Shown: positions 3,570 through 44,885 of the stretch, in pieces
Layout of the letters: each line of letters starts with the position of its first letter
Numbering within the stretch: the stretch's first letter is position 1
From: Bigelowiella natans CCMP2755
Taxonomy: Eukaryota > Protista > Cercozoa
DNA length: 46,058 bases
Assembly: GCA_000320545.1 (NCBI GenBank)
Contig: ADNK01002885.1
Location: 1-46,058, forward strand
Direction: 5' to 3'
Made by a program: the position numbers and the translations under genes
The notes under the pieces: generated by a model
Told to the model about the DNA's origin: nothing
Database searches by the model: none
The model's input: the letters and a program-made list of their open reading frames with translations, nothing else

Positions 3570-3607
<38 letters not shown>

Positions 3608-4812: not shown

Positions 4813-5278
4813 GTTAATTAAACAGCTACTTTCTTTCTCCTTCCTCCGAGGAGGGCTGGGTAAACCACTTGTTCGAAGGAGTTCTCTGGAGATCCTGAGA
4901 TCCCCTGAGTTTTCACATGCATCTCTGAATGATCTCGAGATGGATATTTCAGATACGTTGTCGGATTTTTGATCCCGTAGATCTTTCGAGCATTGCTCAA
5001 CTCTCTTGGGCAACATATCAGCGAAAATCTGCCCAAAGCACCCTCGCCATTCCTACATTCCACACTTGATAACACAAAATTCAGTGGTCCGAATGTTGGT
5101 AATAATATTTTAGTTATTTATTCGGTATATTTTGTTATTACAAGGACCTTGTCGCCAGTAACGAACTCTTGTTTTTTCCCACGACTTCCTTAGACCTCAT
5201 CTTCCAAAAATCCGTCATCAACTCGCCTCCCAACCCCCGCCCTCCCTAAGCATCCATTTTATATTCTACCAATAGCTG

Positions 5279-12021: not shown

Positions 12022-12054
<33 letters not shown>

Positions 12055-12124
12055 AACCATGGCAAACTGACTGATTCACTGACAGACAGCGTCTCCATCT
12101 TACTCGATATAATATATACATATT

Positions 12125-12162
<38 letters not shown>

Positions 12163-15986: not shown

Positions 15987-16328
15987 TTAACTGCGAATGA
16001 CATGTCGAAAGAGGAATGATGAATTGCGAATGACATGTGTGCATCTCTAGATTTGCATGCGGCATCGTGCACGATGCAGCGATTGTCATGGAATCGATGA
16101 ATCCACAGCAACGTAGGCTGCACTGATGAAAGGCCCAGATTCATTTGTCGTGCTGAAATTTGAATTGATGTTTGTACATTTGCTCGCTGTGCGTTCACAA
16201 CGCTGACGACGTGCATGCATGCACGTGTTCATTGCACGTGTGCAACGCCCACATGCTGAAGTTCTCCAGAGCAGAGACAAAGTCCAGAAAGCAGCAAGCA
16301 CATCATGACATTTGTGCATTGCCAGATT

Positions 16329-16738
16329 CACAAGTCCGTCAAACCCGGTGACGACGGGTTTGTGAACAGTGCAGCGCTTTGCGACGCGCTTTGAAGCAGC
16401 AGGCAGTTGCTAGACAGTCAGTCAAAGAAAAGTCATCAGAACTTGTCCGATGGCCAAACCTCAAAAAGTGACCGAAACATTGACCAAAATGTCCATTTTC
16501 AAGGCCTCAAAGTGTGAAAATTCACACCCGTTGTGCAGCGGATTCACGCTGCGCGTTTGTTCTCTGCCACATTTTGAGTGCTTTTGCGTGTGCGTTTGAC
16601 CAAACGTGACATGCACGAAAAATTTCAAAGAAATGCGAGCAAATCCAACGTCCATTGCATCACATGACGCGCTTGGTCGCGCGCAAAAGCTTCCAAATGC
16701 ACACTCTGGCGATTCGTTGCAGGTTTGACGGACTTGTG
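16329..16738. mobile_element. Non-autonomous TIR element (MITE, ~410 bp), probably Tc1/mariner-type
   Basis: Perfect 17-bp inverted repeats cacaagtccgtcaaacc (16329-16345) and ggtttgacggacttgtg (16722-16738). No coding capacity recognised between them. The outer CA/TG may be a mutated TA target-site duplication. Confidence 0.7.
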
Positions 16739-17356
16739 TTGGCACGCACTGAACCTTGACATTGCCTGTGCGTGACCACGATCAAGTGGTGCTGGCTTTG
16801 TCATCGTGCACTGTGCGTGCATGCTTGACTGGCGTCTCATCACTTCCAGACTTGCTGGCTTGCATCACTTGCTGTGTGTGTGGGGACATGCACGTCCACG
16901 TGCGTGCACGCGCAAGGAACACACGTGCCCATGCACACCACACACACGTGCCTGATGAGCACACGTGCTCTGTTCACATCCACACATGCACCAAACAAGC
17001 CACTGCACATGCACCGAAAACCACGACAAGCAACACGTGGTGCACATGGACACATGCATGCACACGTGAGCGCCATCACTTGGCAAACGTGCAGTTGCAG
17101 GTGCCATGGTGCGTGTGAAGTGGGTGATGCACGTGTCGTGGACTGCTCACACGCATGGGGACATGCATGTCCACATGGCTGAGTTTTGCATCAACGACAA
17201 CTGTGTCATGGTGCACGCCAAAGTCATCGCAATCTCCAGATTGCTTGCATGACAATGCACGCGCTGGCACGTGCACACGCACGTTGCCCTTTCCAGCTTT
17301 GTTCACGCATGACCGTTTGGAACTGTCAACCCTGCCTGCAACCCAAAGTTTGCTGG

Positions 17357-17790
17357 TGAGTGAATGAATGAATGAGTGAATGAATGAAGCATTGATCAAA
17401 TCCACAACGAGAACAATGCGAGAACAATGGTGAAAAATTGCAGCTCCAAAGTGTGACAAGAAACTTGCAGTGTGAAGTGCAGTGCCTCGAACTGGCTTCC
17501 GTGAGGACTGACTAGCAAGCTAGCGGGGTTCATGCAAATTGGCACGAACTGAACATTGAATGCATCGCAACTGACAGCTGAGTGACGACGACGCAAAGCA
17601 TCCATCCTGAGCAGGAACTTCCTGACAGCCACGTCCACACGGAGATCAACGACGTCAGGGACAGTCGAGGGGGCGCCGAGCAAGACTCTGGTTTTGACAG
17701 AATCAGGGGCATCAAAAAATGAAGAGCAAGCAGGAGATGCAGGGCCGAGAGCTGCTCTGATGCTGGAGAACAATTGAGTTCTCACAGCAT
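17357..17790 (-). mobile_element. 5'-truncated non-LTR retrotransposon (LINE) 3' fragment with (TTCA)n-like tail
   Basis: Peptide AVRTQLFSSIRAALGP...FFDAPDSVKTRVLLGAP...DLRVDVAVRKFLLRMDALRRR resembles the helical C-terminus after the zinc knuckle of LINE ORF2 (recalled pattern). It is followed by a short UTR and a simple-repeat tail at 17357-17388. Confidence 0.55.
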
Positions 17791-18678
17791 TCAAGTGAGT
17801 GACATGTCTGTCCATTCCACCAGCAAACGAGAATGTGGTTCACTTCCACCCGAAAAGCCAACAGAGCACAGTTGAACAGCTGTGATACCAACACATGAGT
17901 TGGTTCCATTTTGGTGAAATTAGCCAATGTTTGTTTTCCGAAGTGAGCTTTTCTTGACTCTTCTTGTCGTTGTGAACTACGAAAGACCTTCAAGCACTTG
18001 AAGTGGACGAGCATTAGCTAGATACGACGTGGTGTGGAGGTTGTCGCTGCAAGAATATCTGCTATGGAAGTATACTACGTAGTAGGGCTTGGCAGAACAT
18101 CAAGGGATGTTCATGTCAAACATGTATTGTAGATGGTCGTGTTGGTAAATTTCGCAAAGTAATGTGTACACTCGATCTTGAAACACAAGCTGTCTGAAGA
18201 TGAAGTCCAGGTTGTTCCCTTGGTGTTTTCGTTGGGTCTCATTTCATTTGTGGGGGATGTTGCCACATTCATGGCATACACCCTCTAAACCAATTAAAAT
18301 ACTAAATTGAGCAGCTGTAATGTTTCCATGATCTCTCTGCTCCTTTCATGTGTACCTTACAACAATCAGAGTGCCGCCTATTAAGATCGGACTCACGAAA
18401 TAGTCTTAGTTCCAACTCAGTGAGTTTAAAAGATATGACTAACCCGACATCATTAGACTGCCAATTCGGTTCAACACCCAATCTATAAGTCGAAGAGAAT
18501 TTTATTTATTCCTATTTATTCGTTAATACAATTGGACAGTAAGTAAGACGAGAGAGAATATAAGTCATCTCATTTCCCCTCTCTTCGTCATCATTTTGGC
18601 CATTAGGAAGTTCGTAGAATTTCTCTCTAATTCCTTCTCGTGGTGCACTGTTGCTTTCTTTGGTAGGTTGGCCAGAGG

Positions 18679-20689
18679 ATGGCATTAAGCGGGTAGCGTA
18701 CATATTTGATCCGCCGCTTCCTGTGTAGAATGTGAAATTCATTACGCATTGTGGCTGAGATATCATGTACTCTTTTTTTTACTTGTCCCCGCTCCTGTTT
18801 GTACTATTAGAGTGTCTTCGGAAAACTCAGGAGGCTCTGTTTCAGATGAGGAAATGGAACAGTGGAGGGAAATAATTGCCGACAGCGTAGATTTCCATCG
18901 TGTAGTACCAGGACTCCTCAGACTTCTCGACTTCGATGGTGCAGAGGTTTTTCTGAATGCATAACCAATAGATAAATGTTAATATTGGCATGATGAGATA
19001 TTCATATTTGTTTTCCAAAAACAAGAGCTATCATTTTCTTCTTCCTACTGAGAGTTGAGAAACTAAGAAGTAAAGTTACGTGAAGGTGGTAGATAATGAA
19101 ATATTGACGTTTGTATTTTTACTTTCCTCAAAAAACCACTAATGTTGGTAGCTATGGGCTATGGATCAAAGCTGTGGCCGCATACGCATGTGCGCTCATA
19201 ACGTGAAAGACGATGGAGTGTTTCAGTATGAACGATACAGCACATACTATGACTTTGCGAGAGGACAGGGGTACGATAAAAAAAAAAGAGGCTTTATATA
19301 CTACCTTTAATATGAATAATATTTGGTTTCGTGTTAATGTTAGATTGGTAGGACGTGTGTTTTTGTCTGGTTCTTCTGAATGGCAACCAGATGTCTCAAA
19401 GACGGATAGGGAAGTCTTTCATAGGTAATCATCGCAGCACCACGAATTATTTCTGGTACAACAGAACAAAGCAGCATATATCTGGCATCATTCTTAATCT
19501 TTGTTGTCACAACAATATCAGATTTGCTGGGGCGAAAATGCATGGTATAAAGGGAGTCGCTGGTAGTCGTTCGTTAGTAGTCAAATATTGAAAATTAAGC
19601 AAAGTGACAGCAACAGCAGCAGCAGTAGTAGTAATGTTAGTAGTAGTAGTAGTAGCAGGTCGAGTAGTAGTCGCTAGAGGCTGCTTTGTCGTAGTAATGT
19701 TGTAGGAGTAGTAGCAGGTCGAGTAGTAGTCGCTAGAGGCTGCTTTGTCATCCTCACCCACCCAATTTGTCGGACGTCTCAATTTTATTTTCAACCTTGA
19801 GATTGTCGCATCGCATTCATAGCTGCAGCGCTTGGATCATAAGTGCTGAAAATATCCTCCTGCCTCCTTAAATGATAGGATTGTTGTGTGATGCTACCTA
19901 CCTACTCGATATATGATTATCATCAGGCATAGCATGCAATTTTCAGACAGGAGAGAAATGTGTGATCTGTTTGGTTTCTCAAGATGTTCTCTTCGTCTCC
20001 CAAGATAGAAGAACGTTGGTCGAAAATATGGTAGTAGTAAGAGTAGTAGTAGTAATACTAGTAATAGTAGTAGTAGTAGAACACTAATACAATAATATCA
20101 TCATCATCATCATCATCATTGCTCCTGTCTGCTCCTAGTGGATGCTTTACCAAATACAACCTGCATCTTCATTTTTTCCTCTCCCATCTAATTATCACAT
20201 TAATTTGATAGCATTCTAATCCCATCATCCATGTTGCTTGACTTTCAATCGCAGATCCGACGCTGGATTGCTAATTCTGATGGCGAGAGTGAATCTAAGC
20301 TGCCACCATATGGAATAGGAGTTTTTACATCCAACAATAATACAGCTGCTGTCGTTGGGAAATCATCACCATCTCCATCACCATCATCATCATTTATGCT
20401 GACTAGTACGACTAATTCTAACAATGTTTCTTCACGTGTATCTGCTCTTGCTGCAAATATTCTCTCACCGACGCCGACGATAACTATGGTAGTGTGATTG
20501 ACAACTACTTCTTTTGTTAAATTATTGTTTAATTCTACATACAAGCTGTGATGATGTAACGTCGCTACTTGGCATCATTCCGTGATTATTATTCTTGTGA
20601 AACAATTGTCCTCCTCCTCCCTCTGCCTCGTTCCTGTTCTTTTCCCTTATCATTATGCTGCTCTTTATTATTTCGATGGTGACTTACCT

Positions 20690-20721
<32 letters not shown>

Positions 20722-21023
20722 AGGGCATACCATCCTCTGCAGCAGCAGGAGCTTCTTTGCCTCCTCCTTCGCTACTACCCCACTTATCATCATCATCATC
20801 ATCATCATCATCATTATCATATAAGCAGCGACCATCATTACCTCTTCCATCATCATTAAACCTGCAGCAATGTGTTTCCTCCTCCTCCTCCTCATTGATT
20901 CCCGGGGTCACTGCTTTGAAATATAAGACTTTGTCCCAACTATCCCAGAGTAGTATCGTACACAATCAAAATGAGGTAGTAGTAGTAGTAGTAGTAGTAG
21001 TAGTTGTAGTAGGTCATAATAAT

Positions 21024-21058
<35 letters not shown>

Positions 21059-21714
21059 TTGGGAACCAATCGAAACAATCGACACGACAAACAACGATGA
21101 TTTATGTTCTTTCGTGCTTCTTCTCTCTCATCTTCTTCTTCTGTTTCCCAAGAATGTGAACAATTGGCCGCCGTTTCATGAATACACAACGCTAGTTGTA
21201 CTATCTAAACAGTGTTTATTTGAATATTTTAAATATGTTGAACGACGATGTCGCTGTTAATGATAATTACTCATCAGCAAACTGCCATCTTCGGCTCATG
21301 GATCTTCGAGGGAAAGAGTACTGATCCAGTGGTATGTTATTTGTCTTTAATGTGTGTGTGTGTGGGGGGGGTTGCTGTAAGTGCTTATTTTTAAAAGTAT
21401 TTACTTTGTGAATGTTATTGCTTTGATCATTTTCATCACTGATGTAGCAATACAATTCCTCATATGACCAACCAATCAGCATCATATGAAGCTCAAACTG
21501 ATGGAACTGTTTCTATCATCTATGGGGGTAAGTAAGTAGAGTAGTATCTAAAGGGAAAGTAAGTGTGTTCTACAAGTACCTTCCTTTAGACAACATAATC
21601 AACATCATCATCATTATCGATCATAATGATGTGTGCGAGACATGGCATTTTTCTTGATATCCTCTTCTTGTAGTTGCTACTATCTGTTTCCTATTTTTTC
21701 TTCTCCAACTATCA

Positions 21715-21745
<31 letters not shown>

Positions 21746-23033
21746 GCATCATATATTTTTGATCGATCTATCCATCCCCTATTATTATTAACAACGTCGA
21801 TGACCATGATCTATCCATCCCCTATTATTATTATTATTAACAACGTCGATGACCATTCTCATCATCACATTGCTAATATGTGCTAGTCTATAACAACTGA
21901 GCTCGACTTTGAAGGCTCTGAAGTATGGGTTGAGGAATTTCCAAATGCAGGTACTACTACTAGTAGTAGTAACATGCTCTCTTCTTCTTCTTCTTCTTCA
22001 TGAATGATTATAATCCAATCGTTCTGTAATCTCTCTTCTTCTTCACGAATTATTATGTACAAATCATTCTCTTCTTGTTGTTCCTTCCTTAGGAACGGCT
22101 TTTCATGGAGTGACGATTGCGCAAGATAGATCGCATCGTGAATGGGCAGCTTACAGCTCACAGTTTAAGTTTGCAAGCAAACGATCTATGATCGGCAGAA
22201 TAATTAATTATTCAAAATCGGAATTTCATTCTGACGTGTGCTCCCTCCCACTCTCTTCTTTCGTAAGGTCTCCGGTAATGTATCATCATCATCATCATCA
22301 TCATTATCATCATCATTATCATTTATCCAGTTAAAAGAAGGAAGGAAAACAATTGATGATGGGTGGATAGGAATAGATATGGGTGGATAGGAATAGATAC
22401 GGATGGATAGATGCTGCTGATCATTTATTTAATTACATTACAATATAACATAATATAATATATTTTTTATTTAGGGAGCGAAACGGTGCGGTGTACGTGC
22501 TATGGCAGGTCCTAGCGATGATGATGATGATGATGATTGGTGGTGATAGGTGTATTATGAAGCGCAAAATATTATATGCACAATTAGTCCTTGGTATATT
22601 ACAATGGTGATGATGATAATGTGATGATGATAAACATCACCAAGGTATTGATGACAAATTAACTCCTCCTCCTCCTCCTCTTATTGTTGTTGTTCTTATA
22701 TCTGATGTTCATCCAGGCATCTACCACCGCACGGAGGATGGACTACGCGCAGTGATTTGTCTCTTTAGCAAGAAAACAATTCATTTTACGGAGTCTTTTA
22801 AGAATCGTATCAATCAGACGGTACTACTACTACTACTACTACTACTACTATGTTCATAAGCTTCTACCCCTTATGATGCATCATCATTGTTAATTGTCTG
22901 ATATCCTCGCCGTCGCAATTACCATGATCATACGTCATCTATATAGTACATATAGTAATCTCGTCACCATAAACTACTACTACTCCTACTACTCTACTAC
23001 TACTACTACTACTACTACTATTACAACTTCCCA

Positions 23034-23068
<35 letters not shown>

Positions 23069-24563
23069 GATTCAGCTGTGGTCACTGGGGTTATCACCTC
23101 AATCTATCCGCCCTGTCCGTTGGATGACGAAGACGTTCTCCGCTGTCTCCACCACGAATAACAACAATAACAACAATACCGCCGCTGATATGAATACGAC
23201 GACGACAACCACGAGGATGATGAAAATAGGTAGTAGTAGTATTGCTACTGCGGAGACCAATTACTTAGTAGTAGTATGTGGGTTAACAACCTATTCACAT
23301 GCATGCTTCCTCCTCCTTTATATAATATAATGATATAATGAGAGAGAGAAAAACAGACTTCTCGGTTATCTTGACCTACTTTGTGATATATTTCACACCA
23401 TCATGATCTATAATGATTTGTATATATTTTGTTGTACATAGCAGGAACAAAGCAAAGGAGAGGAGGAGGCACTACTACTACTACTACTTCTTCTTCTTCT
23501 TTTACTACTACTACTAGTAGTAGTAGTAGTACTAGTAGTAGTAAGAAAAGAAGGGATAGGTCGTACGCATGTGAGTACTGTGCTAAGGTGTTTCAGAAGA
23601 GAGGAAACTACCAAGTACACCTTAGAACACACACCAAGGAGAAACCTTTTATGTGCATTGATTGTGGGCGTCAATTCACCCAAAAGTCAAATATGAAGAG
23701 ACATAGACAGAAAATCCATAACGTTGGGTTAAAGCCATCATCGTCATCATCCTCATCATCATCCTCATCATCATCGTTATCACAAGCAATAGTAGCAGCA
23801 GGAACAACAACAACAGCAGCAACAACAACAAGAGATGTAAGGACGATGACAACTTCCACCACCACCACCACCAGTAGCACTTTTACGTCAGCAGCAGCAG
23901 CAGCAGCGTCTAAGAACGTTGATAGCTGTTTAGCACCCACTGATACTCTAGCAGGAGGAGAAGGAAAGATGATCGTATTATCAGGAGGAGGTACAATGGG
24001 AAGTATAAAGTCTACTGATGATTCAAGAAGAGGGGAAGGAGGAGGAGGAAATAATAATAACAATGCTGGTGATGAGAAAGGAGTGACGAGGAAGAAGAGT
24101 GCTGTTTCTGTTCCTATTCAATTAGATGACGACAACGACGCCAGCATCAATAATATCAACAAAAATAACAGCTCACAATATGCCTTGACAGCGGATAATA
24201 ATAATGATAACAACATCACTCATACTACTTTGTCTGCTAATCAAGCAGCTGCTACATCATCATCATCATCATCAGCAGCAGCATCATCATCATTAGTATC
24301 ACAGAAACCTATTCCACGAGTATCAACTAGTGGTGGAGATGGCGATCCTTACCATGTAGGAGGAGGGGGAGGAGGAGGAGGAAGAGGGAGAAGAAAGCGC
24401 CCACGTACTCATCTTTCATTAACAAACGCACACCATCATCATAAACCAATAGTCGCTGCCGGGGATAATGATGCTGATGATGATGATCAGAAGGAGGTGA
24501 ATCAAAACATTAGTAGTATTATTCACATATCATTACGAATGGCAACGACAATCTGATAATATT

Positions 24564-24599
<36 letters not shown>

Positions 24600-24607
24600 T
24601 ACATATA

Positions 24608-24644
<37 letters not shown>

Positions 24645-25165
24645 CGCATAATCTAACGAGCGATCATAATCTACATAAATTTAACCAAATCTTCTTTGTT
24701 GATTTCTCTTTATTTCACCCCCTTCCCATAAATTAGCCCCCCGCGTTGAGATCCCGCCCCTTTTGTCCTCATACTCCTCCACCACCGAATAATTCTTCTT
24801 CTTCTTCCACCAGAGAGCAGCACCCTACTCGTCATCATTCTCACCACCAACAACACCATCACCCGAATTCTCCAACGCTATTATCTTCTTCTTCTTCTTC
24901 TTCGTTTTATGCAGCATCATCATCATCCGATAATATTCAACATTCCTCAGTAGCAATACCGTATTCATCACCAGCAGCAGTGTCTTCCTATGAACAACCA
25001 AAAGGGGGCGGAGGAGGAGGAGGTAGCGACAGTGCTGCAGGACATGTGTTACCAGCAGCGCTGCCAAAAACACCATTATCCCTTCAAGATAGTTGTAGTA
25101 TCAATGACAATGGGAATGATGCGGGTGATGATTTACTGTCTTCATCATCGCTTTGGTGGGGTTGA
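18679..25165 (+). CDS. Transcription factor with two NLP/NreA-like GAF domains and two C2H2 zinc fingers, multi-exon
   Basis: Phase-consistent exons. GAF-A: LLDFDGAE|LWAM...YERYSTYYDFARGQG|LVGRVFLSGSSEWQPDVSKTDREVFHR|FAGAKMHGIKGVAG|IAC...CVICLVS. GAF-B: ELDFEGSEVWV...EWAAYSSQFKFASKRSMIGRIINYSKSEFHSDV...FVRSP|GAKRCGVRAMAG|IY...AVICLFS. Then YACEYCAKVFQKRGNYQVHLRTHTKEKPFMCIDCGRQFTQKSNMKRHRQKIH (~23565-23720) and a low-complexity tail. Confidence 0.82.
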
Positions 25166-26212: not shown

Positions 26213-27813
26213 TTAGGCCATAGAAGACAAAGAGCCAAGACAAGGCAGCTTTCCACCTTGATACTTTTCAACGAGTAATTTTGCGAGAGGGATAGAGAGG
26301 CCTTGGAGGTCTTGCTCCTTTGTAGTACCACCAATCTTTATTACAACACCCTTTGGAGGAACCTGATTCATGATGGAACCATTTTCGTACATTTACACAC
26401 ATCAAATCAACAAATCTAGATATAACTTATATCAAGATTTCAAGATATATTAGCGATATTGATATTCTATTAGACTTTACAAATCATGTGTTATTATCCG
26501 TGTTATACATGTTGCAAAACTGCACACCTCCTTGAGAACGGAAGAACAATCGAAGACATTGCCGTCAATGACAAGAGTAACCGAATTACGTATTTCTTTG
26601 ACTTGAGCGAGAGAGAAATTCTTAGAAGGAATCCTCTTTGGATCAATTCCCCCAAGAGAAGCATACAATGCTTGAGGCCTGACCTTTTCATCTTTAGGCA
26701 CCATCCACCCTCCAGGTTGAGGGCCTACGAACAAATACGAGCATTCATTGATCAATATTTTAGACCCATCATCATCCTGCCCTGCATATATCTGATAATA
26801 AACTTGTTTACCTGCAAGAGTAGGACACTCAAACCATACAGCCCCGTTCCCCTCCTTTCTGTCTTTATCTTCACATTTATGAATTTTTAGTCTATAGGAG
26901 CTGTTGTTCAGCATACCCATTACCTAAGAAGAAGAAGAGTGTTCAAAGTCAAAATAAATCTCTCATCATTCATATCATAATACAGGTAAGCTAATCTACT
27001 GATCTAGACTCACATTCCAGGCGATGTGAAGTGGTTGCGTATTATGGTCAGAGTCCCATGCACGACACCGGATTTCAGACGAATTACAGAGCAATTCAGT
27101 TTCGAGTTGAATGGACCTTTTTGTAAGATATATGGATATCAAGAAGAACTCATATCATATCAATCAGCATCAACGATGGATTTGGGGGAGGAGAGAAATG
27201 AGATCATGTATTACTACTACTACTACCATGCGAACAATAATAATCCTTGATTTTATGCGGATTTTGTTTAACATTAGAACATTGCAAATCCGATCCCTGC
27301 TACCAACCCAATCATTATTACCAGTGTATCCAGCACCAATGTTTCCCTCTCGAGTCGAAGTTGTCCATGCATTTCTCCTTCGCATTCTTCTTATACCTAG
27401 ATTATTAATTGAAGAACACATGGTGCATATATATTATGTTGTTGTGATCATTATCATCACCAGTACTTTATCATCCTCAAACTCCTTGACATTATATAAT
27501 CGTAGCAGTAAACATCATTGTTATTTTAAAGATAGTAGTGAGAAGAGTGTTACAACTACTACTACTACCACCACGCACTATGATTACCATTCACGTTCAA
27601 ATCTTTGGATCTGTGCGGCCATCCACGTCACCCCTGTAATAAAGAATCAACTAACGAATCAACAATAACAAACATAGAGTAATACAATTAGTAGTATAGT
27701 AATGGTAGTAGTAGTAGTAATAGCAGCAGCATATATACGGCAAAATGATCAGAAATAACAATCATCACATAGAAATAAATGTCAGTTTATGATGGTACTG
27801 GTGCTCCACCCAT

Positions 27814-27850
<37 letters not shown>

Positions 27851-27874
27851 TTATAAAAATAAAAAATATATTTC

Positions 27875-27916
<42 letters not shown>

Positions 27917-30665
27917 TTGTACGTTATCTTTCGTATGATTATCACCTTGATCGATTGACACTTCACACCGAATAACCTTCCTCCCTCCTCCTCCATAAGC
28001 ATACCCCCTTACAGTGTATTTCTTACCAGGGGCTGGATGGATGATTTCCTTATGCTCTGGAGATCTGATTGCCTAAACAATATTAGTAGCACACATGTGT
28101 TCTCCATCAGTCAAGAAGGCAAGGATATTAGAGACGATAAGAACAACGAGAAGATGACATGCCATCTTTGGTAAAATGCGTCGTTATGTTGTGTGTGTGT
28201 GTGTGTTGGTCCATCCAATTAGATTCCTAGTGTAGTAGTAGTAGTAGTAGTTGTAGTATTAGCAGTAGTAATAGTATAACCGATTGGATATTGATATCGT
28301 TGATAATGAAGTCTGGCCTGTGCCACCAATCTTCTTCATTAGCACGCTCAGCTGTTACCTGAGGAAAGTGAGTGGGAGGAAGAGGAGGAGGAGCATCACC
28401 ACCATCATACTGCTGCTGCTGCTGCTGCTGCTACTACTACTACCACTACTGCTACTACTACTACTACTACTACCTCCGAAGGAAGTACTCGGTTATCATA
28501 GTAATGGAAGTGGTTTGTTGACTCTTTGTCAGATACTTCAATGTGTGATAACCACTTGACCATACGTCCTCCAATAAATCCAGGAATGATGATACGAAGG
28601 GGAAACCCGTGGTCAGGGGACAGAGGTAATCCTATTATAATTATTATTATTATTATAAATACCAGAGAAGATAAATGTATAGAATCAATGAGAAGAGGAG
28701 GAAAAACAATTCCAACGCAAAATGTGCGGATGTCATGTCAACAACGCTTAATATAAAATCCATTTCGAGCATCATATATGTACATATATTTTGTGGTGCT
28801 ATACATATATACTCACACTATATAAATCAACACCGTTCTGTGCATAGGCCAAAATAACATCCCAATTATCGTTCATTGCACGATCGATGGCGATAGAAGT
28901 ACCATATGATCCTGTGTTATTAGGAAGAGGAAGGTGGAAAAGAAAGAGGGTAGTAAAATTAGTCTAGTGGTTAGGTTCTTCCTATAGTCGGATAGTTAAA
29001 AGCTGCTACGCATCAGGTATTTCGGGTTATTCTTCTCTTCTTATTTACTTCTACTTTGTTCTTTTTTACTACCATCTTGTCCTTTAGGCAATTCTTTCAA
29101 AGGCCCTCGAAAGCAGACGAATTTGGCAGATTTAGTAGCAGTGTCGGCAATACCTCCACAGTGTTTTATAACTGTGGACAGTCGTACTCCTACAGGTGGG
29201 GCGGTGTATGTATTATTATTTGCTCGATAAATGGAGCTATTTCAGGGGAAACTTAATTTATCATGCTACTATATCCTCTTCCCTCCTATAGTACTCACTA
29301 CTACCTTTCCAAACACTGGTTGCATGTGCAGCAGCACCCCATGAAAAGCCAAGGCCCTTCTTGACCATATTCTCCTCTTTACGACGATTACCAGCACAAG
29401 GAAACGTACACGGAAATTCATACGATGGCAATGATGCTAGCTGATCCTAAAAAGAAGAAGAAGAAGAATAGAGAGGGAGATGAAGAGGAAGATGTTGTTG
29501 GTAAGATTGGTAATTAGGAACAGGGGGTAGTAGTATATGGGGAGAATGGTTATAATGATAATGTTACGACTCTTATGATGGATAGCACTATCAATAGGTA
29601 TCATTTTGTGGAAACCAAGCAACGAATATTGTTGACTTAAGTAATGTAAGGGACAACATGCCTTCAAAACTGGTTTTACTGGTGATACTGAGATAGACAT
29701 TAGAAACTAATAATACAAATACAACCATGGTGAAAGTCGTTTTGTTCTTCACAAGACCCGTCACAGTAACACGATGTTCATCCCACGATATCCTTGGGAC
29801 CTTCAATTGTTTGTACTTGAAGAACATATACTCCACTTCGAATTGTCATAGATCGAAATGAAGTGGTATTGTAATGATAGTTGAGTTTTTCTACCATTCA
29901 TATATTACCTTCCCGTGGTTGCGAACGAAGTGAATCTTTGTAGGTGTTATAAACCCAGCATCAAACAGATCTTTTAATGGAGGCTCACAGTTAAATGGAT
30001 GGCGTCCTGATTAAGTATATAGTAGTGTGAATAGTATAAGCTAGTGTTCATATCTTTCAGATCTCTGCTAGAGGGTGATAGGAATTCAATTCAAATTTCA
30101 TCAAACAGCACCCAACTAACCAGTAAGACGAATAAGAGAAGGATCTCTCTTAATCCAGGTGTCTGGAGTTCCTGTGTCGCGGCCATCTACATATCCCACC
30201 AACTGACGTGGCTTGTATCTGAGTAGTAATAAGTATATGCGACAGTGACCTATATATAATATTCTGTACAGTAAAGCATATGTGTGTATGTGTGCATATG
30301 TGTGTGTGTGTGTGTGTGTGTGTATTATGATTACCCCATTGCCCTTGGTGAGGGCTTCACGGCGTACGCTATAGAATTCTACAGTGCATGGAATAAGTAA
30401 GTTATTATTAAAGATCTAGCTTACTAGTAAATGTGTGATCATGCAGAATTGAACGTATATTTTCAACACTAAGCTACTGAACCTGGAAAAGGTACGAGAA
30501 AACGGCAAGGACAACTGCCAAAATTAAAAATGTCATGATCATCCCAGAGCCCTGGGCGGCATTTGCGAGGGAATCCACGTTTAAAGCAATAGCAGATGTG
30601 ATGCCTCCAATAAGTGAGGCGATCATCATCATTATCCTTTGTTTTTGAGCTTCTTCGCCGTATCT
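26213..30665 (-). CDS. NIA: Eukaryotic assimilatory nitrate reductase-like protein (Moco + dimerisation domains, degenerate cytochrome b5 start, no FAD/NADH domain seen); 5' end uncertain
   Basis: Exons give [23 protein letters not shown]|[10 protein letters not shown]...[96 protein letters not shown] and RAWD...WN|VMGMLNN...PTLAG|PQPGGWM. These are diagnostic NR motifs. The start could be ~30339, ~30632 or as far as 31147. The terminal exon is tentative. Confidence 0.9.
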
Positions 30666-32911: not shown

Positions 32912-33213
32912 TAAATGGGTTGTTTATCAGCGTAAAAAAAATAATGTTTGAACAATGCTGTGATTACTGCACTTATGATCAGTCCAATCATCATCACTTA
33001 TGCCGTACTGTGTACACGGATACGACTACTTACTCTTGTTGATTTATCATCAGCCGCTATTCGAGAGGGTACAACAACGTGGGAAGATTTAGATATCGAT
33101 GATGCTGATGTGAGACTCAAGTGGGCTGGGCTATTTCACAGAAGGTTATATTATTATTAACAGCAAATACTAACCTAACTACTGCTGCTACCACCTTTCT
33201 TCTTCTTCATCTT

Positions 33214-33249
<36 letters not shown>

Positions 33250-33515
33250 AGTTGGTAAGTCGTTGATGATCTGTCTTACTCGTCTCACTCATCATAGGAA
33301 AAGAACACCGGGGAGATTCATGATGCGGCTTAAAGTTCCTAATGGGCTGTTGACGTCAGATCATATGCGGTTCTTCGCCGATACCGTTGGGATGTAATAG
33401 AGTGTGTGTGTGTGCGCGTGTGTGTCTTATATATATACATCCAGAGAGATAAATGCTTTTGTAAACATCATTATTATCATCATCACTACTAAATACCACA
33501 TATCTAATGAATTTT

Positions 33516-33547
<32 letters not shown>

Positions 33548-33704
33548 TCATGAACCATGTTGTTTATTTACTTTAAACCACACATCGTTTGCTAGATATC
33601 CTGCTGATGTTGGAGTCATCGATATCACCACAAGGCAAAACATACAGCTTCGAGGTGCGAGTTAATATCCATACATATATACATACATATATTCTATTTT
33701 TTTG

Positions 33705-33772
<68 letters not shown>

Positions 33773-34089
33773 CATAGGTTTTGGTCAATTGATTAGAATT
33801 GAGGAATAATTCTTTTCTGTAATATTAATTATTATTATTCTATCTTGCTCCATTCTACTTCTTTTTCTTTTTCTTGTCTTTTTGTTCTTCTCCTTCTCCT
33901 CTTTATTATTATTACTATTTCTATAACCACAGGCATTGAATTGCAGGATATGACTGAATTAATCGATGGGTTGCAAATGGTAGTAGTTGTTGTTGTTGTT
34001 GTGGTGATGCAGATGTAGTAGCATAGAGAGAAGAAGAAAAGGAACAAAACAATACCAAGAACACATCTAACGAATCTCCACTTGTACTA

Positions 34090-34125
<36 letters not shown>

Positions 34126-34907
34126 GCTTAGTAATACTCATGCCATAGGATGATAAGAGAGAAGTGGCCTCTCAAACGTACAAATACTACTACTGCTACT
34201 ACTACTACTCATGTGATGATATCAGAGAGGCCTCTCAAACGTACAGAGCGGGATGGATAATGTAAGGAATCTTGTCGGATCTCCCATTGCTGGTGAAACT
34301 ACTACACTGCTACTAGTAGAAGATCTAATTTGCCTATTCTTCTTGTCATCATCATGACCTTAGTGATGATCATCATCAATAGCAAGCAACTTCGTGCTGT
34401 GACTACTATTATTCATTCATTCACTAGGTATTGATCCAGAAGAGTTGGTAGATACTCGTGACATTGCGAAGGATATTGATGCAATGATTACAAATGACGG
34501 AAAGGGGAATCCAAAACTAGCTAATCTTCCAAGGAAGTTCAACATAGCAGTGTCAGGTGATTGTAGAAAGATATTTAGAACCTTTTCCAGTGTATTTTTG
34601 ACTTGTTTCACAACTCACCATCATCCGGAGGATTCTCATTCGCCTTTTCACTCTCTCACATATAGTAGCAAGAAGATCCCCATTAGCCTGTTCACTCTCA
34701 TATATAGTAGTAGTAGTACCTGAAAGCAGCCTTCTCCTCCTATTACTCTACTATCACAAATCTCCCCTCCCCCTCCCTTCTTAGGATCGCGTGATGATTT
34801 CGCTCACACAAGCATTAACGATATCGGACTGAGACCTTGCCCAAATAAGGTATGAGTATCATCATATGTTGTTGCAGCAACTGATTAATACTTTAACAAC
34901 ATTTAGT

Positions 34908-34951
<44 letters not shown>

Positions 34952-35002
34952 TATTCAGTAGAAGGATGGAAGGACGGAAGAATCAGCATGATCATACATT
35001 TG

Positions 35003-35038
<36 letters not shown>

Positions 35039-35460
35039 ATTTGAAGAATACAATGCATTGCATCGATATTGCTATACCTCTTATGATTTAAACAATGGAA
35101 GAGGAGGATGAGGAGACTTTCCTTCTTACTGGTGGTCTCTTTCTTTCCTTCCTTCATCTCCTGCTACTGATACTCCTACTACTATTACTTACTTCCTTAC
35201 TCACTCACTCACTACTACTACTACTACACCTGTTTCCCCCCCTCTACCTGATTTGTCCCTTCGTACGTTACGTGCTACTACCATAGGAATCTGGGGAAAT
35301 GGGATTCAATGTGATTGTAGGAGGCTATTTTAGCATTAAAAGGGTTATGGAGTCGATTCCTATGGATATCTGGTAACTATTAAGTAATAGAGCTCATTTA
35401 TACTAACAGCACTCACCATATATTCATTTGTTACTATTGTAAGGGGATGATGATGATGAC

Positions 35461-35496
<36 letters not shown>

Positions 35497-35591
35497 ATGT
35501 TCTAATGATGGTCTTCGCACCGTAACAACATCAAAGGATCAAAGCAGAGGATGCTGCAAGATTTTGTGAAGCAGTGTTACTATACTTCAGG

Positions 35592-35624
<33 letters not shown>

Positions 35625-36432
35625 AACTACAACCACTGCTGCTACAAGTACCTTTTACGTGTACTTTCTATCAGCATGGGTACAGATATACCTTATACCT
35701 ATACTTTCTATCAGCATGGAAGGATTCATTTCTTTTGTTGATATTGTTCAGTTGAATGCAACAAGACTGTTAGTTATACTTCCCAATGTATGGACATTAT
35801 CATCATCATCGTCGTCATTATCATCATCAATATCATCTGTGTATTGATATCCCTTTAAAGGGATAATGGCTCTCGAGGCGATAGGCAAAAAGCAAGACTC
35901 ATATGGCTGATAGAAGATATGGGGTCAGTATGTAAGAACAACAAAGAAGATGAGAGATACTGCTAAAGTCTTATCGAGCTTATTCTATTACAATTATCAT
36001 CTATATTTAATATTACTATTACTATTCACATGTATAGAATGGAGGGATTCCGTCAAGCCATTTCTGACAAATATGACGAGATGTTCCCCAAGAAAAAGGG
36101 AGGAGCGGTAATTCTGACACACAATGATAATAATAATAATAACAATAATAAAAACAGGAGGACAACAAAAACATGATGATGACGATGCTGATGCTGGTGT
36201 GCACGTGTATACAAATATCGTTGAGAATAGCTCATTCAAAGAGTAGTAAGAAGAATGACGTATTACAGTGAACTTAATATAGCAAATTATGATGATGATG
36301 GAATTTTGGTTAAAATGCTGTGTTTGATGTATTGTAAGGCAATTCCAGCACAACCAGAGCCTTGGGCAGTAGCAGGTTTAATAGACGTATGTACCTGTGT
36401 GTTTGTGTTTGTGTTTGTGCGTGTGTGCGTGC

Positions 36433-36477
<45 letters not shown>

Positions 36478-38783
36478 CTGATCTGTGTATCTCTAATGTA
36501 GTTATCAACATACGTGATGATGATTCTTCTGTCCTTGTTTGACTGCAATGAGAAATGAATAACGGCTGATAACAGCAGGGACTAATACTCCTACTCAACC
36601 GCACAAAAAGAGAGATATACTAGGTGTCCATTCACAGGTAATAGGTAGCGGTGATTGATTGTTATGTGCTTGCTTTAATGTAAAATATCATCGAAACATG
36701 ACTGCTACAACAACAACAACAGGCAGCAGTATTTCATCCTTCATATTGCAGTATTAATTGTAGTCACACTGTTCGTCTCTTCGTTGTGTTTGTGATTACT
36801 TCTATAAAACTATCATTATCTCCACCACCACCATCATCATACCTATTCGTAGAAACAAGAGGGCTTAAGTTGGGTTGGCATCAATGTCCCTGCAGGAAGG
36901 ATCTTGCCTGATGAGGTGGTAGCAGTAGTTCTTGTACTAGTACCTGTAGTTGCTGTATTGATCAAGATGAGATAGTGATTATGATGATGATGTTGTTGTA
37001 GCAGTTGTGGTAGTGGTAGTACGTAGCAGTAGTAGTAGTGACTTGATACGTCATTATTTGAAGGAATAGCGTCTGAGTAGTACTCTCATTACCAAATTGA
37101 TTCATTTGAATAATATGTGGTGTTGTATATAATGCTGTTATTCAAGGCTATGGCTCTTGCTGATATTGCTGATAAGTACAGTCAAGGAGAGATTCGGTAT
37201 TATTATTTGTGGAGTGATGATGATGATGATGATGATGATAAGATCCAAATATATGGTGTATGAGAAGTGAAGATATAATAAGTTACTTCTCACCTGCTAA
37301 TGTGATCAATATTGTTTTTCAATAGTAAAATTGTTCTAGTATTGAATTGATGTTGTCCAAATGTAAATAAATATATGCAATCATCTTTTCATATATTCTT
37401 CCTTGTGATGATGCTGACAATATGACAATCTCATCATCATCCTATTAGCCTTACAGTAGAGCAGAATGTAATCTTCCCCAACGTCAACAACACGAAGGTC
37501 GTCATTAAACGAATAAAAAACAAACAGAAGAAGAAGAAGAAAAAGAGCAGCAAGAAGAAGAAGAAACAATGGCGGTTAGCCGAACTAAACCTAATGAGAT
37601 AATGATGATAATGATGTTGATAATGATGATGATGGAGATGGAGATGGAATGGAAGACACTATCTTTCCATGTAAAAGATATATCTAATCCTCCCATTGTA
37701 TGAGAGGAAGAGTCATTGATTCACGTAATTCGTTTGTGAAGAATTGACCGTATATGATGGTTGCCCTTATGTATTGAAGGTTTCTGAGTTGCTGCAGGAG
37801 CCTCTATTCAACATCGGCCACTATTTTATCCCAAAAACAGACAAGGATTTTCCCCTCTCCCGCGGGTAGTAGTGGTAGGCAGCAGTAGTTGATACTACGT
37901 TCATGTCTCACACACTAGGCAGTAGGCAGTAGTAGTAGTACTAGTAGTAGTAGGTCCCTAATAGTTGTAGTAATAGTGTGAATTCTCACATTGTTTCATC
38001 GTCCAAGCAGATGATGACATCATATCCTTTATTATATTTTCTAACCACTTGTCTTGTAATGGTGATTGATGTCATCATCCTTGTTTGTACATCTCTTTAA
38101 TGATTTATATCATTATTATCATCGATACTACCAGACTTGTTTCCTGCACAGGATCGCAATTTTGCGGTGTAGGTAGGTAGCATCAGTGTGGTGTGAGAGT
38201 GTGTGTGAGTGTCTCTTCCAACAAATACAGTGTGGTGTGAGTGTGTGTGTGTGAGTGTCTCTTGCATCAAATACACGTTAGTAATTACTATTTACTGTTT
38301 CGAGTCTGCGATGGATGATCTCCTTAAGATTTGTGAACCGACTAGATTCGCTTGGAACAATTCTGCTGCTCAATTTAGCGCCTGATTTATGTTGATGACG
38401 CAGTTACTATTGTATGTAATGATATGCAACCGCCATCCTTTGGTGTGACATTAAGTAATATCACTATTACTACTCCTACTACTACTATTACTACTACTAT
38501 TGCTACTACTTTTATGACTTCTGCTATTACTTACTACGACTGTTATTATTACATACAGCGTTGATCGAGACTAAGAATCGTGCTATAGAACTTTCAAAAC
38601 GCCTCGAGGAAGAATTAAAAGTAGTAGTAGAAGTAAGTAGTAGTAACAGTGTTCAGTAGGAGGAGGAGGAGGTATATGTGTCGGTCGACATCTATCGTCA
38701 GAATATCATGATGATGATGATGATGAGAATTATCATGATGATGATAACCAATGCGTGACGTGAGTCAACAAATTGGTGAAAAG

Positions 38784-38823
<40 letters not shown>

Positions 38824-39593
38824 GGTAGATATGCCTGTGCGAATACACTGGACAGGGTGTCCTAATTCATGCGGTCAAGCTCAAGTTGCAGATATTGGCT
38901 TAATGGTTGGTTGGTTGTTGCTAGATTAAATAATCATAAGGAAACACCTGCTGCTCACTGAGAAACTAATTGCTGTCTTTAGCTACCAGCGATCAACGCT
39001 GTAACAAACAACACATCGACGAGTTTGAACATATTGATAGACAGTGTTGTTTCACATGCATCTTGAACTCACACATCCTGTGTGAATGAACGATAAATTA
39101 GGGAGGTCCTGCTAGGGTTGAGAAGGAAATTGATGGAAAAGTCAAAAAGGTTGCAGTTGAGGGAGTTAACATCTTTCTTGGAGGAAAGGTTGGCGAAGAC
39201 CCATTTCTAGGCGAGGTAATGATACTTAGTTATAACATCTATAATAATAGCAATGGCAAAGTCAATTTATTCCAATGCATACAAATCATGGATCAACAGA
39301 TGGATCTTGCCCTAATCTGCATCACGAATAGCTTCTTAGTAGCAACTTTGAGCATCATCATCATTATCAATAAGACAATGACATATTTAAAGGTTTACAA
39401 GAAGGGAGTGCCTGCAGATTATAAATATCTAATCCCTATCATGAAGGTAAAAAGAGGAAAATATTGATTACTTGTACTTGCACGCGCACACTAAATATGT
39501 ATACGTAAATGTGGTTGTTTCATGTAATGCAGCACTCACGTGGTATATCATTAGGACATCTTAAAGGAAAAGTTTGGAGCGATGGAGAAGTGA
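31462..39593 (+). CDS. NIR: Ferredoxin-nitrite reductase, plastid-targeted (bipartite leader), multi-exon
   Basis: Signal peptide MLRLLLLSAICTAIPVNA is followed by a Ser/Arg-rich transit-like exon. The mature part has RLKWAGLFHR|RKRTPGRFMMRLKVPNG, DITTRQNIQLRG, SGMDNVRNLVGSPIAGID, NLPRKFNIAVSG, NDIGL, CTGSQFCGVALIETK and RIHWTGCPNSCGQAQVADIGLMG (siroheme/4Fe-4S cysteines). It ends DILKEKFGAMEK* at 39593. Confidence 0.95.

Positions 39594-41969: not shown

Positions 41970-42008
<39 letters not shown>

Positions 42009-44228: not shown

Positions 44229-44277
<49 letters not shown>

Positions 44278-44828: not shown

Positions 44829-44885
<57 letters not shown>

What the first reader, a model, noticed from the sequence alone, without database searches (positions are those of the whole stretch)
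18679..25165. Candidate new nitrate sensor-regulator: tandem NLP/NreA-like GAF domains fused to C2H2 zinc fingers, next to NR and NiR
Seen: one phase-consistent gene with two internally homologous GAF repeats and two C2H2 fingers, about 1 kb from the end of nitrate reductase. Known: plant NIN-like proteins sense nitrate through N-terminal GAF-like regions (motifs GLPGRVF...PEWTPDV and KGQGVAGRAF) but bind DNA with RWP-RK. Chlamydomonas NIT2 is GAF + RWP-RK, and fungal NirA is Zn2Cys6. Here GAF-A reads RGQGLVGRVFLSGSSEWQPDV. Inference: this is a pathway-specific nitrate-responsive factor built by domain shuffling. The ORF track shows only the finger exon intact, so the fusion is easy to miss.
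Basis: partly seen in the sequence, partly recalled or inferred. Interest (0 to 1): 0.85.

Follow-up and report, generated by a model that had tools for sequence, protein, structure and literature searches.

The report
Tandem-GAF zinc-finger regulator beside nitrate genes
This is a real, expressed 17-exon gene of the alga Bigelowiella natans for a DNA-binding regulator with two GAF-like sensor domains and two classical zinc fingers; it sits next to the nitrate and nitrite reductase genes, which makes it a good but unproven candidate nitrate regulator.

Summary
Window 18679-25165 (+) is one 17-exon, all GT-AG, 1036-aa gene of Bigelowiella natans. RNA-derived contigs show or imply 15 of its 16 introns, and a public transcript ORF shows the last one. 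The protein has two internally homologous GAF-like domains, a KKRR basic patch, two Krüppel-type C2H2 fingers, and a low-complexity tail ending in a conserved SLWW[G/N] motif. A single 813-aa Chlorarachnion reptans transcript encodes the same layout, so the fusion is real and conserved. The JGI gene model (288 aa) is truncated and lacks the fingers.

The GAF-like domains belong to the plant bHLH-MYC_N / NLP-GAF superfamily. Structurally they are closest to EGL3 and MYC3 (Z 15-17), with NreA next (Z 14). The protein has no RWP-RK and no PB1 domain, so it is not an NLP or NIT2.

The nitrate-sensor reading rests only on position: the gene lies tail-to-tail about 1 kb from the NR-like gene of the known NR/Fd-NiR cluster. 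Its paralogue, the GAF-only relative and two distant relatives have no nitrogen-related neighbours. Nitrate dependence and nitrate binding are untested.

This scan already found the same architecture on other DNA of this genome (a paralogue, s1-731826). The new points here are a second orthogroup, the corrected gene model, and the link to NR/NiR.

The parts
18679..25165 (+). Whole coding region of the GAF-GAF-C2H2 gene: 17 exons, 3111 nt of CDS, 1036 aa. Exons: 18679-18692, 18811-18946, 19152-19270, 19344-19424, 19522-19562, 19927-20030, 20255-20488, 20724-20975, 21278-21331, 21480-21527, 21887-21950, 22093-22274, 22475-22508, 22717-22820, 23070-23229, 23442-24496, 24737-25165.
   Evidence: Model built and translated. 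Public proteins P0008 and P0153 cover exons 1-6 and P0158 covers exons 16-17. The model aligns collinearly with the C. reptans transcript ORF P0156.
18845..20287 (+). GAF-A (aa 17-176), spread over exons 2-7. It contains RGQG|LVGRVFLSGSSEWQPDV across the exon 3/4 joint.
   Evidence: hmmsearch domain 17-176, E 1.1e-44 against the paralogue profile. AlphaFold model of P0153 has pLDDT 90-98 over residues 20-160. GAF fold: Z 17.3 to EGL3 and Z 14.0 to NreA. Pfam bHLH-MYC_N 26.2 bits and GAF_NLP 18.8 bits, both below cut-off.
20288..21328 (+). Ser/Thr/Pro-rich low-complexity linker (rest of exon 7, exon 8, most of exon 9). The JGI model omits exons 7 and 8.
   Evidence: Translation. Contig X1 record 2 and X2 record 10 cover it. 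The ortholog has a shorter linker here.
21329..23093 (+). GAF-B (aa 345-497), spread over exons 9-15. It is an internal repeat of GAF-A. Exon 12 carries KRSMIGRIINYSKSEFHSDV.
   Evidence: Repeat alignment score 156 against 28.7 +/- 4.3. hmmsearch domain E 4.5e-18. It groups with GAF-B of the C. reptans ortholog (96/90) inside a GAF-B clade (98/95).
23543..23554 (+). Basic patch KKRR just before the fingers; likely nuclear localisation signal or DNA contact. A second patch, RRKR, is at aa 859.
   Evidence: Regex on the model. The function is inferred.
23561..23716 (+). Two Krüppel-type C2H2 zinc fingers (CEYC...HLRTH and CIDC...HRQKIH) joined by an HTKEKPF linker.
   Evidence: Pfam zf-C2H2 E 3.8e-9, 36.9 bits, cut-off 25.2, 2 stretches. 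About 90% identical to the C. reptans ortholog over the two fingers. The ortholog's fingers hit many solved DNA-binding fingers, including two-finger ADR1.
23717..25147 (+). Long Ser/Thr/Asn/Gly/His-rich low-complexity tail, interrupted by intron 16 (24497-24736, full of CA/TA microsatellites).
   Evidence: Translation. P0158 shows the spliced form.
25148..25165 (+). Conserved C-terminal motif SLWWG followed by the stop codon.
   Evidence: The same ending is seen in orthologs: P0156 ...SFWWN and P0159 ...SLWWN. Paralogue type...FPWMRTS.
26213..30415 (-). Neighbour: NR-like molybdoenzyme gene, convergent with the regulator. Only part of its extent was mapped.
   Evidence: Pfam Oxidored_molyb (33.3 bits) and Mo-co_dimer (57.9 bits) on exons. 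3' end taken from P0166. [21 protein letters not shown] is NR-type by my reading.
32945..39300 (+). Neighbour: ferredoxin-nitrite reductase gene, divergent from the NR gene. Approximate extent.
   Evidence: Pfam NIR_SIR_ferr and NIR_SIR on exons. The B. natans euknr/Fd-nir cluster is described in PMC6400420.

Best explanation
The gene encodes a nuclear, sequence-specific transcription factor of a family defined here. The family has two N-terminal GAF-like domains of the bHLH-MYC_N/NLP type, a basic patch, two C2H2 fingers, and a disordered tail with a conserved C-terminal SLWW motif.

Shown: the gene structure, its expression, the domain identities, the internal duplication, and conservation of the whole layout in other chlorarachniophytes and some unidentified eukaryotes.

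Inferred: the fingers together with the basic patch bind DNA. The tandem GAF-like module is the regulatory input, either a small ligand (as in NLP7 or NreA) or a partner or repressor protein (as in MYC/JAZ and EGL3/MYB), and it gates activity or nuclear residence.

The gene is the immediate neighbour of the de novo assembled NR/Fd-NiR cluster. No RWP-RK regulator was detectable in the genome. The most likely specific job is therefore control of nitrate assimilation genes, but that step is conjecture. My estimates: transcription factor about 0.9; nitrate-pathway regulator about 0.3; direct nitrate binding about 0.12.
For: - Gene model and RNA joints.
- Transcript ORFs: P0008, P0158, and the ortholog P0156, which carries GAF-GAF-ZnF on one 813-aa ORF.
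- C2H2 above the Pfam cut-off.
- GAF fold modelled at pLDDT above 90. Z 15-17 to EGL3 and MYC3, Z 14 to NreA.
- Family profile against PDB sequences: EGL3 E 5.6e-10, MYC3 E 4.9e-8.
- Ortholog and paralogue pass the bHLH-MYC_N cut-off (39.8 and 33.9 bits).
- The tandem duplication is older than the paralogue split.
- NR and NiR neighbours confirmed. The cluster is known and arose within this lineage (PMC6400420).
- No RWP-RK match in the genome at E <= 0.01, and no other locus hits GAF_NLP or bHLH-MYC_N.
Against: - The nitrate link is positional only and is seen once.
- The paralogue on C3389 and the GAF-only relative on C1218 have unrelated neighbours (O-acetylhomoserine sulfhydrylase, TrmE, an acyltransferase-like membrane protein).
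- Distant GAF-GAF-ZnF genes P0007 and P0009 sit among protease, pseudouridine synthase, UCH, PX and glycosyltransferase genes.
- The nearest solved relatives of the GAF-like domain bind proteins, not nitrate.
- The window's own GAF-A is below the Pfam cut-offs for both bHLH-MYC_N (26.2 against 30.2) and GAF_NLP (18.8 against 24.1).
- GAF-B has lost the conserved Trp (EF instead of EW).
- There are no expression data under different nitrogen sources.
- The RWP-RK search was six-frame on an intron-rich genome and could miss a split 49-aa domain.
- The neighbouring NR-like gene itself looks atypical: no FAD/NADH module was seen.
Confidence: 0.75

Rival explanations
1. Direct nitrate sensor and regulator. 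One or both GAF-like domains bind nitrate as in NLP7 or NreA. Binding releases the C2H2 fingers to activate the adjacent NR and NiR genes, so the protein functionally replaces NIT2/NLP in chlorarachniophytes.
For: - Immediate neighbour of NR/NiR.
- GAF_NLP is the second-best Pfam family.
- NreA is the best non-plant structural match: Z 14.0, rmsd 2.8 A over 129-134 residues.
- The Arg in G-L-V-G-R-V is nearly invariant in the algal homologues, whereas MYC3 and EGL3 lack it in the alignment.
- No RWP-RK was found in the genome.
Against: - Only 12% identity to NreA, and no sequence-level hit to it.
- Many other GAF domains score Z 12-14.
- Nitrate-contact residues could not be compared.
- Family members elsewhere are not linked to nitrogen genes.
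- No binding or expression data.
Confidence: 0.12
2. Transcription factor regulated by a protein partner, unrelated to nitrate. The GAF-like domains act like the MYC/EGL3 N-terminal domain, as a docking platform for a repressor or co-factor. The position next to NR is chance.
For: - Best sequence and structure matches are EGL3 and MYC3 N-terminal domains solved in complex with MYB and JAZ peptides.
- bHLH-MYC_N is the best Pfam family for 73 of 77 homologues.
- The other family members have no nitrogen-gene neighbours.
Against: - JAZ proteins and R2R3-MYB partners of this kind are plant-specific as far as I know, and no partner is identified here.
- By rough count, the chance that one of two or three family members lands directly beside the NR/NiR pair among about 21,000 genes is about 3 in 10,000, though this was computed after the fact.
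Confidence: 0.4
3. Two separate genes (a GAF protein and a zinc-finger protein), or an assembly or annotation artefact, as the 288-aa JGI model would suggest.
For: - The JGI model P0153 stops inside GAF-B.
- The 23229|23442 joint was not displayed by read laying.
- De Bruijn contigs break in the low-complexity repeats.
Against: - X6 record 18 (889 nt) and X2 record 12 continue 59-60 nt past exon 15, consistent with the start of exon 16.
- The phase is kept, and contig depths are similar across the gene.
- The C. reptans ortholog carries both GAF domains, both fingers and the same C-terminal motif on one transcript ORF and aligns collinearly.
- P0001, P0007, P0009, P0015 and P0016 have the same fusion. 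P0007 and P0009 are single uninterrupted genes.
Confidence: 0.03

Closest known systems
Plant NIN-like proteins (NLP7) and Chlamydomonas NIT2
   Same: Both are transcription factors with N-terminal GAF-like domain(s) of the same superfamily. The G-L-x-G-R-V...W motif is shared. A role in nitrate assimilation control is plausible from the gene's position. NLP7's N-terminal region binds nitrate (reviews PMC13766177 and PMC11062454).
   Different: - No RWP-RK and no PB1 domain; DNA binding is by two C2H2 fingers instead.
- GAF_NLP scores are below the Pfam cut-off (18.8-23.4 against 24.1).
- Nitrate binding is untested.
Plant bHLH-MYC_N domain factors (MYC2/3, EGL3/GL3)
   Same: These are the best sequence and structural relatives of the GAF-like domain (Z 15-17.3, rmsd 2.0-2.8 A; profile E 5.6e-10 to EGL3). 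In both cases the regulatory domain lies N-terminal to a DNA-binding domain.
   Different: - There is no bHLH domain.
- The domain is duplicated in tandem.
- The JAZ and MYB partners are plant-specific.
- Identity is only 14-19%.
Staphylococcal NreA (single-GAF nitrate receptor)
   Same: Same compact GAF fold: Z 14.0, rmsd 2.8 A over 129-134 residues.
   Different: 12% identity and no detectable sequence relationship. NreA is a stand-alone protein that acts through the NreBC two-component system. Conservation of the binding pocket was not assessed.
Paralogue in the same genome (C3389; earlier finding s1-731826) and its transcript-level relatives P0001 and P0010
   Same: Same GAF-GAF-2xC2H2 layout. 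The fingers are 76% identical. GAF-A and GAF-B each form clades across the two genes.
   Different: - It is a different orthogroup: C-terminal FPWMR(T/S)S instead of SLWW[G/N], and finger helices KKGNWQAH against KRGNYQVH.
- Its GAF-A is intron-free.
- It is not next to nitrogen genes.
Pathway-specific regulators encoded inside nitrate clusters of yeasts (Ogataea/Hansenula YNA1 and YNA2, Zn2Cys6) and fungal NirA
   Same: They are a precedent, from my own knowledge, for a dedicated transcription factor gene lying in or beside a eukaryotic nitrate assimilation cluster.
   Different: The protein families are unrelated (Zn2Cys6 binuclear cluster, no GAF), and the lineage is different.

Membership tests
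NLP / NIT2 (RWP-RK nitrate regulators) | RWP-RK DNA-binding domain | tested here: not met
   No RWP motif in the 1036-aa model. No PF02042 hit in the full-length ortholog P0156 or in any scanned exon. None of the 150 best homologues has the motif.
NLP / NIT2 (RWP-RK nitrate regulators) | C-terminal PB1 domain (NLPs) | tested here: not met
   No PB1 hit in P0156 or in exons 16 and 17.
NLP / NIT2 (RWP-RK nitrate regulators) | GAF_NLP domain (PF22922) above the gathering score | tested here: not met
   18.8 bits for the window's own GAF-A in P0153 and 23.4 bits for ortholog P0156, against a cut-off of 24.1. The domain is related but sub-threshold.
NLP / NIT2 (RWP-RK nitrate regulators) | Nitrate binding, or nitrate-dependent activity | not testable with these tools
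   Needs ITC or MST and nitrogen-shift expression or localisation data.
bHLH-MYC_N domain (PF14215) | Domain score above the gathering cut-off (30.2 bits) | tested here: inconclusive
   The window's own GAF-A scores 26.2 bits, below the cut-off. Ortholog P0156 scores 39.8, the paralogue-type P0001 33.9 and P0009 38.0, all above it. The family profile hits EGL3 at E 5.6e-10.
bHLH-MYC type transcription factors | bHLH DNA-binding domain C-terminal to the MYC_N domain | tested here: not met
   No HLH family was reported for P0156, P0001, P0007, P0009 or P0015, or among the 25 most frequent families of the 77 homologues.
GAF fold (Pfam clan GAF) | Antiparallel sheet flanked by helices, matching solved GAF domains | tested here: met
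   AlphaFold model of P0153 has pLDDT 90-98 over residues 20-160. Foldseek gives 267 PDB matches at E <= 0.001, with GAF domains prominent among the best listed. VIA-align Z is 12-17 over about 130-140 residues.
Classical C2H2 zinc finger (PF00096) | C-x2-C-x12-H-x3-5-H units above the cut-off, with a TGEKP-like linker | tested here: met
   36.9 bits against 25.2, two stretches. The motifs are at aa 586 and 614 with an HTKEKPF linker.
NreA-type nitrate receptor | Nitrate-contacting pocket residues | not tested
   Only fold similarity was obtained (Z 14.0, 12% identity). I had no residue-level superposition and no reliable list of contact residues.
Eukaryotic nitrate assimilation cluster member | Conserved linkage with NR, NiR or NRT2 in relatives | tested here: inconclusive
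   Linked in B. natans. No genomic context is available for the true orthologs, which are known only from transcripts. The paralogue, the GAF-only relative and distant relatives are not linked.

The most novel reading that the evidence does not exclude
Chlorarachniophytes lack RWP-RK regulators and use this GAF-GAF-C2H2 protein as their nitrate receptor and transcription factor. The tandem GAF module binds nitrate directly. The gene was recruited next to a nitrate cluster that this lineage assembled de novo from genes of green-algal (NR) and ochrophyte (NiR) origin. That would be an independent wiring of an NLP-type sensor domain to a different DNA-binding domain.
Probability: 0.12. Interest if true: 0.85.

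Novelty: new variant of a known kind. Interest (0 to 1): 0.55.

Why it matters
How algae outside the green lineage sense nitrate is largely unknown. Nitrate control matters for marine primary production. This gene offers a concrete, testable candidate in Rhizaria: an NLP/MYC-type GAF sensor module joined to zinc fingers instead of RWP-RK or bHLH, encoded beside the NR and NiR genes.

Even without the nitrate link, it defines a conserved transcription-factor architecture absent from the literature I could search. It shows that the MYC_N/NLP GAF-like domain, usually treated as plant-specific, is widespread in other eukaryotes: 232 representatives at E <= 0.001. It also corrects a truncated public gene model (Bigna1 144074).

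Tried and rejected
- **Pfam on single GAF exons by reference.** No hits; the exons (26-84 aa) are too short. I therefore used contiguous public proteins (P0153, P0156) and intron-free paralogue ORFs.
- **MAFFT of exon 12 with exons 3 and 4 (A1).** Misaligned, so I dropped it.
- **phmmer of the C1218 relative against PDB.** Only noise.
- **AlphaFold with a 2-sequence alignment.** pLDDT 44, unusable. I repeated it with 123 sequences.
- **Synteny test in relatives.** P0007 and P0009 have no nitrogen-gene neighbours, and P0015 is only a transcript. I found no genomic contigs for the true orthologs.
- **RWP-RK, GAF_NLP and bHLH-MYC_N scans of the genome.** No RWP-RK was found, and only this family gives weak hits to the two GAF-type models. 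The RWP-RK absence is not proof, because the search was six-frame on an intron-rich genome.
- **Literature.** I found no paper describing GAF plus C2H2 factors, RWP-RK in Bigelowiella, or nitrogen-shift transcriptomes of B. natans. Supplements of the iron-response paper do not mention protein 144074. Liu et al. 2022 is not held, so I could not check the NLP7 pocket residues.
- **Raw RNA run X21.** Only 20 reads were laid, too few to be useful.
- **Joined model.** Exons were searched one by one by reference. I joined them only inside local scripts, for translation and for alignment with proteins already fetched.
- **Two-gene or artefact reading.** Rejected (see the rival explanations).

Full report
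**What is there.**
The window is intron-rich eukaryotic DNA of about 40% G+C. Only one long ORF is visible in 18.6-25.3 kb, the 375-aa zinc-finger ORF. Reading the three plus-strand frames and the sequence itself, I assembled a 17-exon model. Every intron is GT..AG, every phase fits, and the product is 1036 aa with one terminal stop.

**Organism.**
A cluster look-up shows that the first 165 residues are identical to JGI model Bigna1 144074 of Bigelowiella natans (P0153). The assembly has 91.4 Mb in 3736 contigs. P0153 has only 288 aa. It skips exons 7 and 8, goes wrong inside GAF-B and lacks the fingers.

**Transcript evidence.**
- Twenty public runs from 7 studies hold 0.39-0.56 of the sampled words of the 6487-nt stretch, 19 of them 0.39-0.51. 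That matches the exon fraction 3111/6487 = 0.48, as expected for spliced RNA.
- Read laying on 18600-24599 shows eight GT..AG joints directly in three contig sets: 18692|18811, 18946|19152, 19270|19344, 19424|19522, 19562|19927, 21331|21480, 21527|21887 and 21950|22093.
- Contig arithmetic supports the other joints. X1 record 2 (804 nt) runs from exon 2 through exon 7 plus 87 nt that fit the start of exon 8. X2 record 10 links exon 8 to exons 9-11.
- X6 record 18 (889 nt) and X2 record 12 link exon 8 or exon 12 through exons 13-15 and continue 59-60 nt further. That fits the first 60 nt of exon 16 before its Thr/Ser repeat.
- Depths of the contigs are similar along the gene.
- The last intron lay outside the 6000-letter limit. 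The MMETSP ORF P0158 reads ...DDDDQKE|PPALRSRPF...LLSSSSLWWG, which is exactly 24496|24737.
- Only the 23229|23442 joint was not displayed to me.

**Independent support from an ortholog.**
Chlorarachnion reptans transcript ORF P0156 (813 aa, MMETSP) aligns collinearly with the model across every exon junction. It is 41% identical overall, about 52% in each GAF domain and about 90% over the two fingers. It ends in ...SFWWN, where the window gene ends in ...SLWWG. Another ortholog fragment, P0159, ends in ...SLWWN. So GAF-GAF-ZnF on one transcript is conserved in chlorarachniophytes.

**Domains.**
- The two GAF halves (aa 17-176 and 345-497) align with score 156 against 28.7 +/- 4.3 for shuffled sequence.
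- They share two intron positions and phases (GVA|G with AMA|G, and ENM|I with NQT|I), and exons 6 and 14 are both 104 nt.
- Pfam finds two C2H2 fingers in exon 16 (36.9 bits, cut-off 25.2). They have an HTKEKPF linker and a KKRR patch in front.
- The single GAF exons are too short for Pfam.
- The window's own contiguous GAF-A, as in P0153, scores 26.2 bits for bHLH-MYC_N and 18.8 for GAF_NLP, both below cut-off.
- The ortholog scores 39.8 bits for bHLH-MYC_N (above the 30.2 cut-off) and 23.4 for GAF_NLP (cut-off 24.1).
- An AlphaFold model of P0153, built with a 123-sequence alignment, has pLDDT 90-98 over residues 20-160.
- Foldseek and VIA-align place the model in the GAF fold. EGL3 and MYC3 N-terminal domains match at Z 15-17.3 (rmsd 2.0-2.8 A, about 135 residues). 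NreA follows at Z 14.0, then fRMsr and many sensor GAFs at Z 12-14.
- A family profile hits EGL3 (E 5.6e-10) and MYC3 (E 4.9e-8) among PDB sequences, and does not hit NreA.

**The family.**
- The genome holds three relatives: this gene, a GAF-GAF-ZnF paralogue on C3389 with fingers 76% identical, and a gene on C1218 where only GAF-A was seen.
- A profile search of 1.84 billion representatives found 232 proteins at E <= 0.001.
- Seven of the best hits carry a C-terminal C2H2 pair (P0001, P0007, P0009, P0010, P0014, P0015, P0016). None of the 150 best has an RWP-RK motif. Most share G-[LIVM]-x-G-R-V.
- Of 77 scanned, 73 match bHLH-MYC_N, 16 match GAF_NLP and 12 match GAF_2.
- A domain tree puts all GAF-A copies in one clade (97/95) and all GAF-B copies in another (98/95). 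The window gene pairs with C. reptans in the GAF-B clade (96/90), and P0156 is its nearest relative in the unresolved GAF-A subclade. The tandem duplication therefore predates the paralogue split.

**Neighbours and the nitrate question.**
- A molybdoenzyme gene with NR-type sequence lies on the minus strand (Oxidored_molyb and Mo-co_dimer). It ends at 26213-26215 according to the transcript-derived P0166. That is 1.05 kb from this gene's stop, tail to tail.
- Fd-NiR follows on the plus strand from about 32.9 kb.
- This euknr/Fd-nir cluster of B. natans is known. It is thought to have formed de novo in the lineage from genes of different origin (PMC6400420). That paper does not mention a regulator.
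- In favour of a nitrate role: the adjacency; the relationship of the domain to the one that binds nitrate in NLP7 (reviews); and the apparent lack of RWP-RK in the genome (with the caveat of split exons).
- Against it: the closest solved relatives are protein-docking modules. The paralogue, the C1218 relative and two distant GAF-GAF-ZnF genes have unrelated neighbours. The true orthologs are known only as transcripts. No nitrogen-dependent expression data were available to me.

**Verdict.**
The protein is a GAF-like-domain transcription factor next to NR/NiR. It is neither an NLP (no RWP-RK, no PB1) nor a MYC (no bHLH). Nitrate sensing remains a hypothesis, at about 0.3 for a pathway role and about 0.12 for direct binding.
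- The architecture appears undescribed in the literature I could search.
- This scan had already met it in a paralogue (s1-731826, s1-417589).
- I class it as a new variant of a known kind: sensor-domain transcription factors of the NLP/MYC superfamily with a swapped DNA-binding domain.

Exons were searched by reference. Public proteins returned by the tools (P0153, P0156 and others) and intron-free paralogue ORFs served as contiguous proxies. Joining was done only in local scripts.

Noticed in passing
window 26213-26923 (-): The NR-like gene seems to end after the Mo-co dimer domain plus a tail of about 90 aa. The tail starts like cytochrome b5 ([30 protein letters not shown]) but has no HPGG. 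Transcript-derived P0166 splices to [12 protein letters not shown]...GSLSSMA and stops. I saw no FAD/NADH exons in 25.2-26.2 kb. Two further Mo-co_dimer loci exist in the genome (C1957:26071-26607 and C3043:2525-2719).
   Followed up: partly
window 18679-22274 (+) versus public model P0153: JGI model Bigna1 144074 (288 aa) is a truncated, mis-spliced version of this gene. It skips exons 7 and 8, leaves exon 12 early, and lacks the fingers.
   Followed up: yes
window exons 5/6/7 and 13/14/15: Two introns lie at the same position and phase in the GAF-A and GAF-B halves, and exons 6 and 14 are both 104 nt. By contrast, GAF-A of the C3389 paralogue is intron-free within a 401-aa open frame. This suggests old introns that the paralogue lost, or parallel gain.
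   Followed up: partly
G000:C1218:168943-170121 (L012 943-2121): A third family member with a single clear GAF-A domain and a KRRR patch. I found no fingers within 5 kb downstream. It is flanked by an O-acetylhomoserine sulfhydrylase-like gene, a multi-pass membrane acyltransferase-like gene and a TrmE-like GTPase (my reading of the translations).
   Followed up: partly
P0158 (MMETSP ORF): Its last 220 aa or so are this gene's exons 16-17. Its first 225 aa or so are unrelated, probably a chimeric transcript assembly through a Ser repeat. It has one residue difference from the window (DSSSIND against DSCSIND).
   Followed up: no
window 15068-15983 (+); 16177-17885; 39900-41070; 42000-45200 (+): Other contents of the window: an EF-hand (calmodulin-like) gene; two G+C-richer stretches (about 50%) that earlier readers called transposon debris; and a class I tRNA synthetase gene that looks like isoleucyl-tRNA synthetase (tRNA-synt_1 hit).
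   Followed up: partly
L015 (GCA_977009605.1 contig, gene 2952-4829) and L016 (ENA metagenome scaffold, gene 10001-13000): Intron-free GAF-GAF-2xC2H2 genes occur in unidentified, more compact eukaryotic genomes. This shows that the architecture is found beyond the cultured chlorarachniophytes sampled here.
   Followed up: partly
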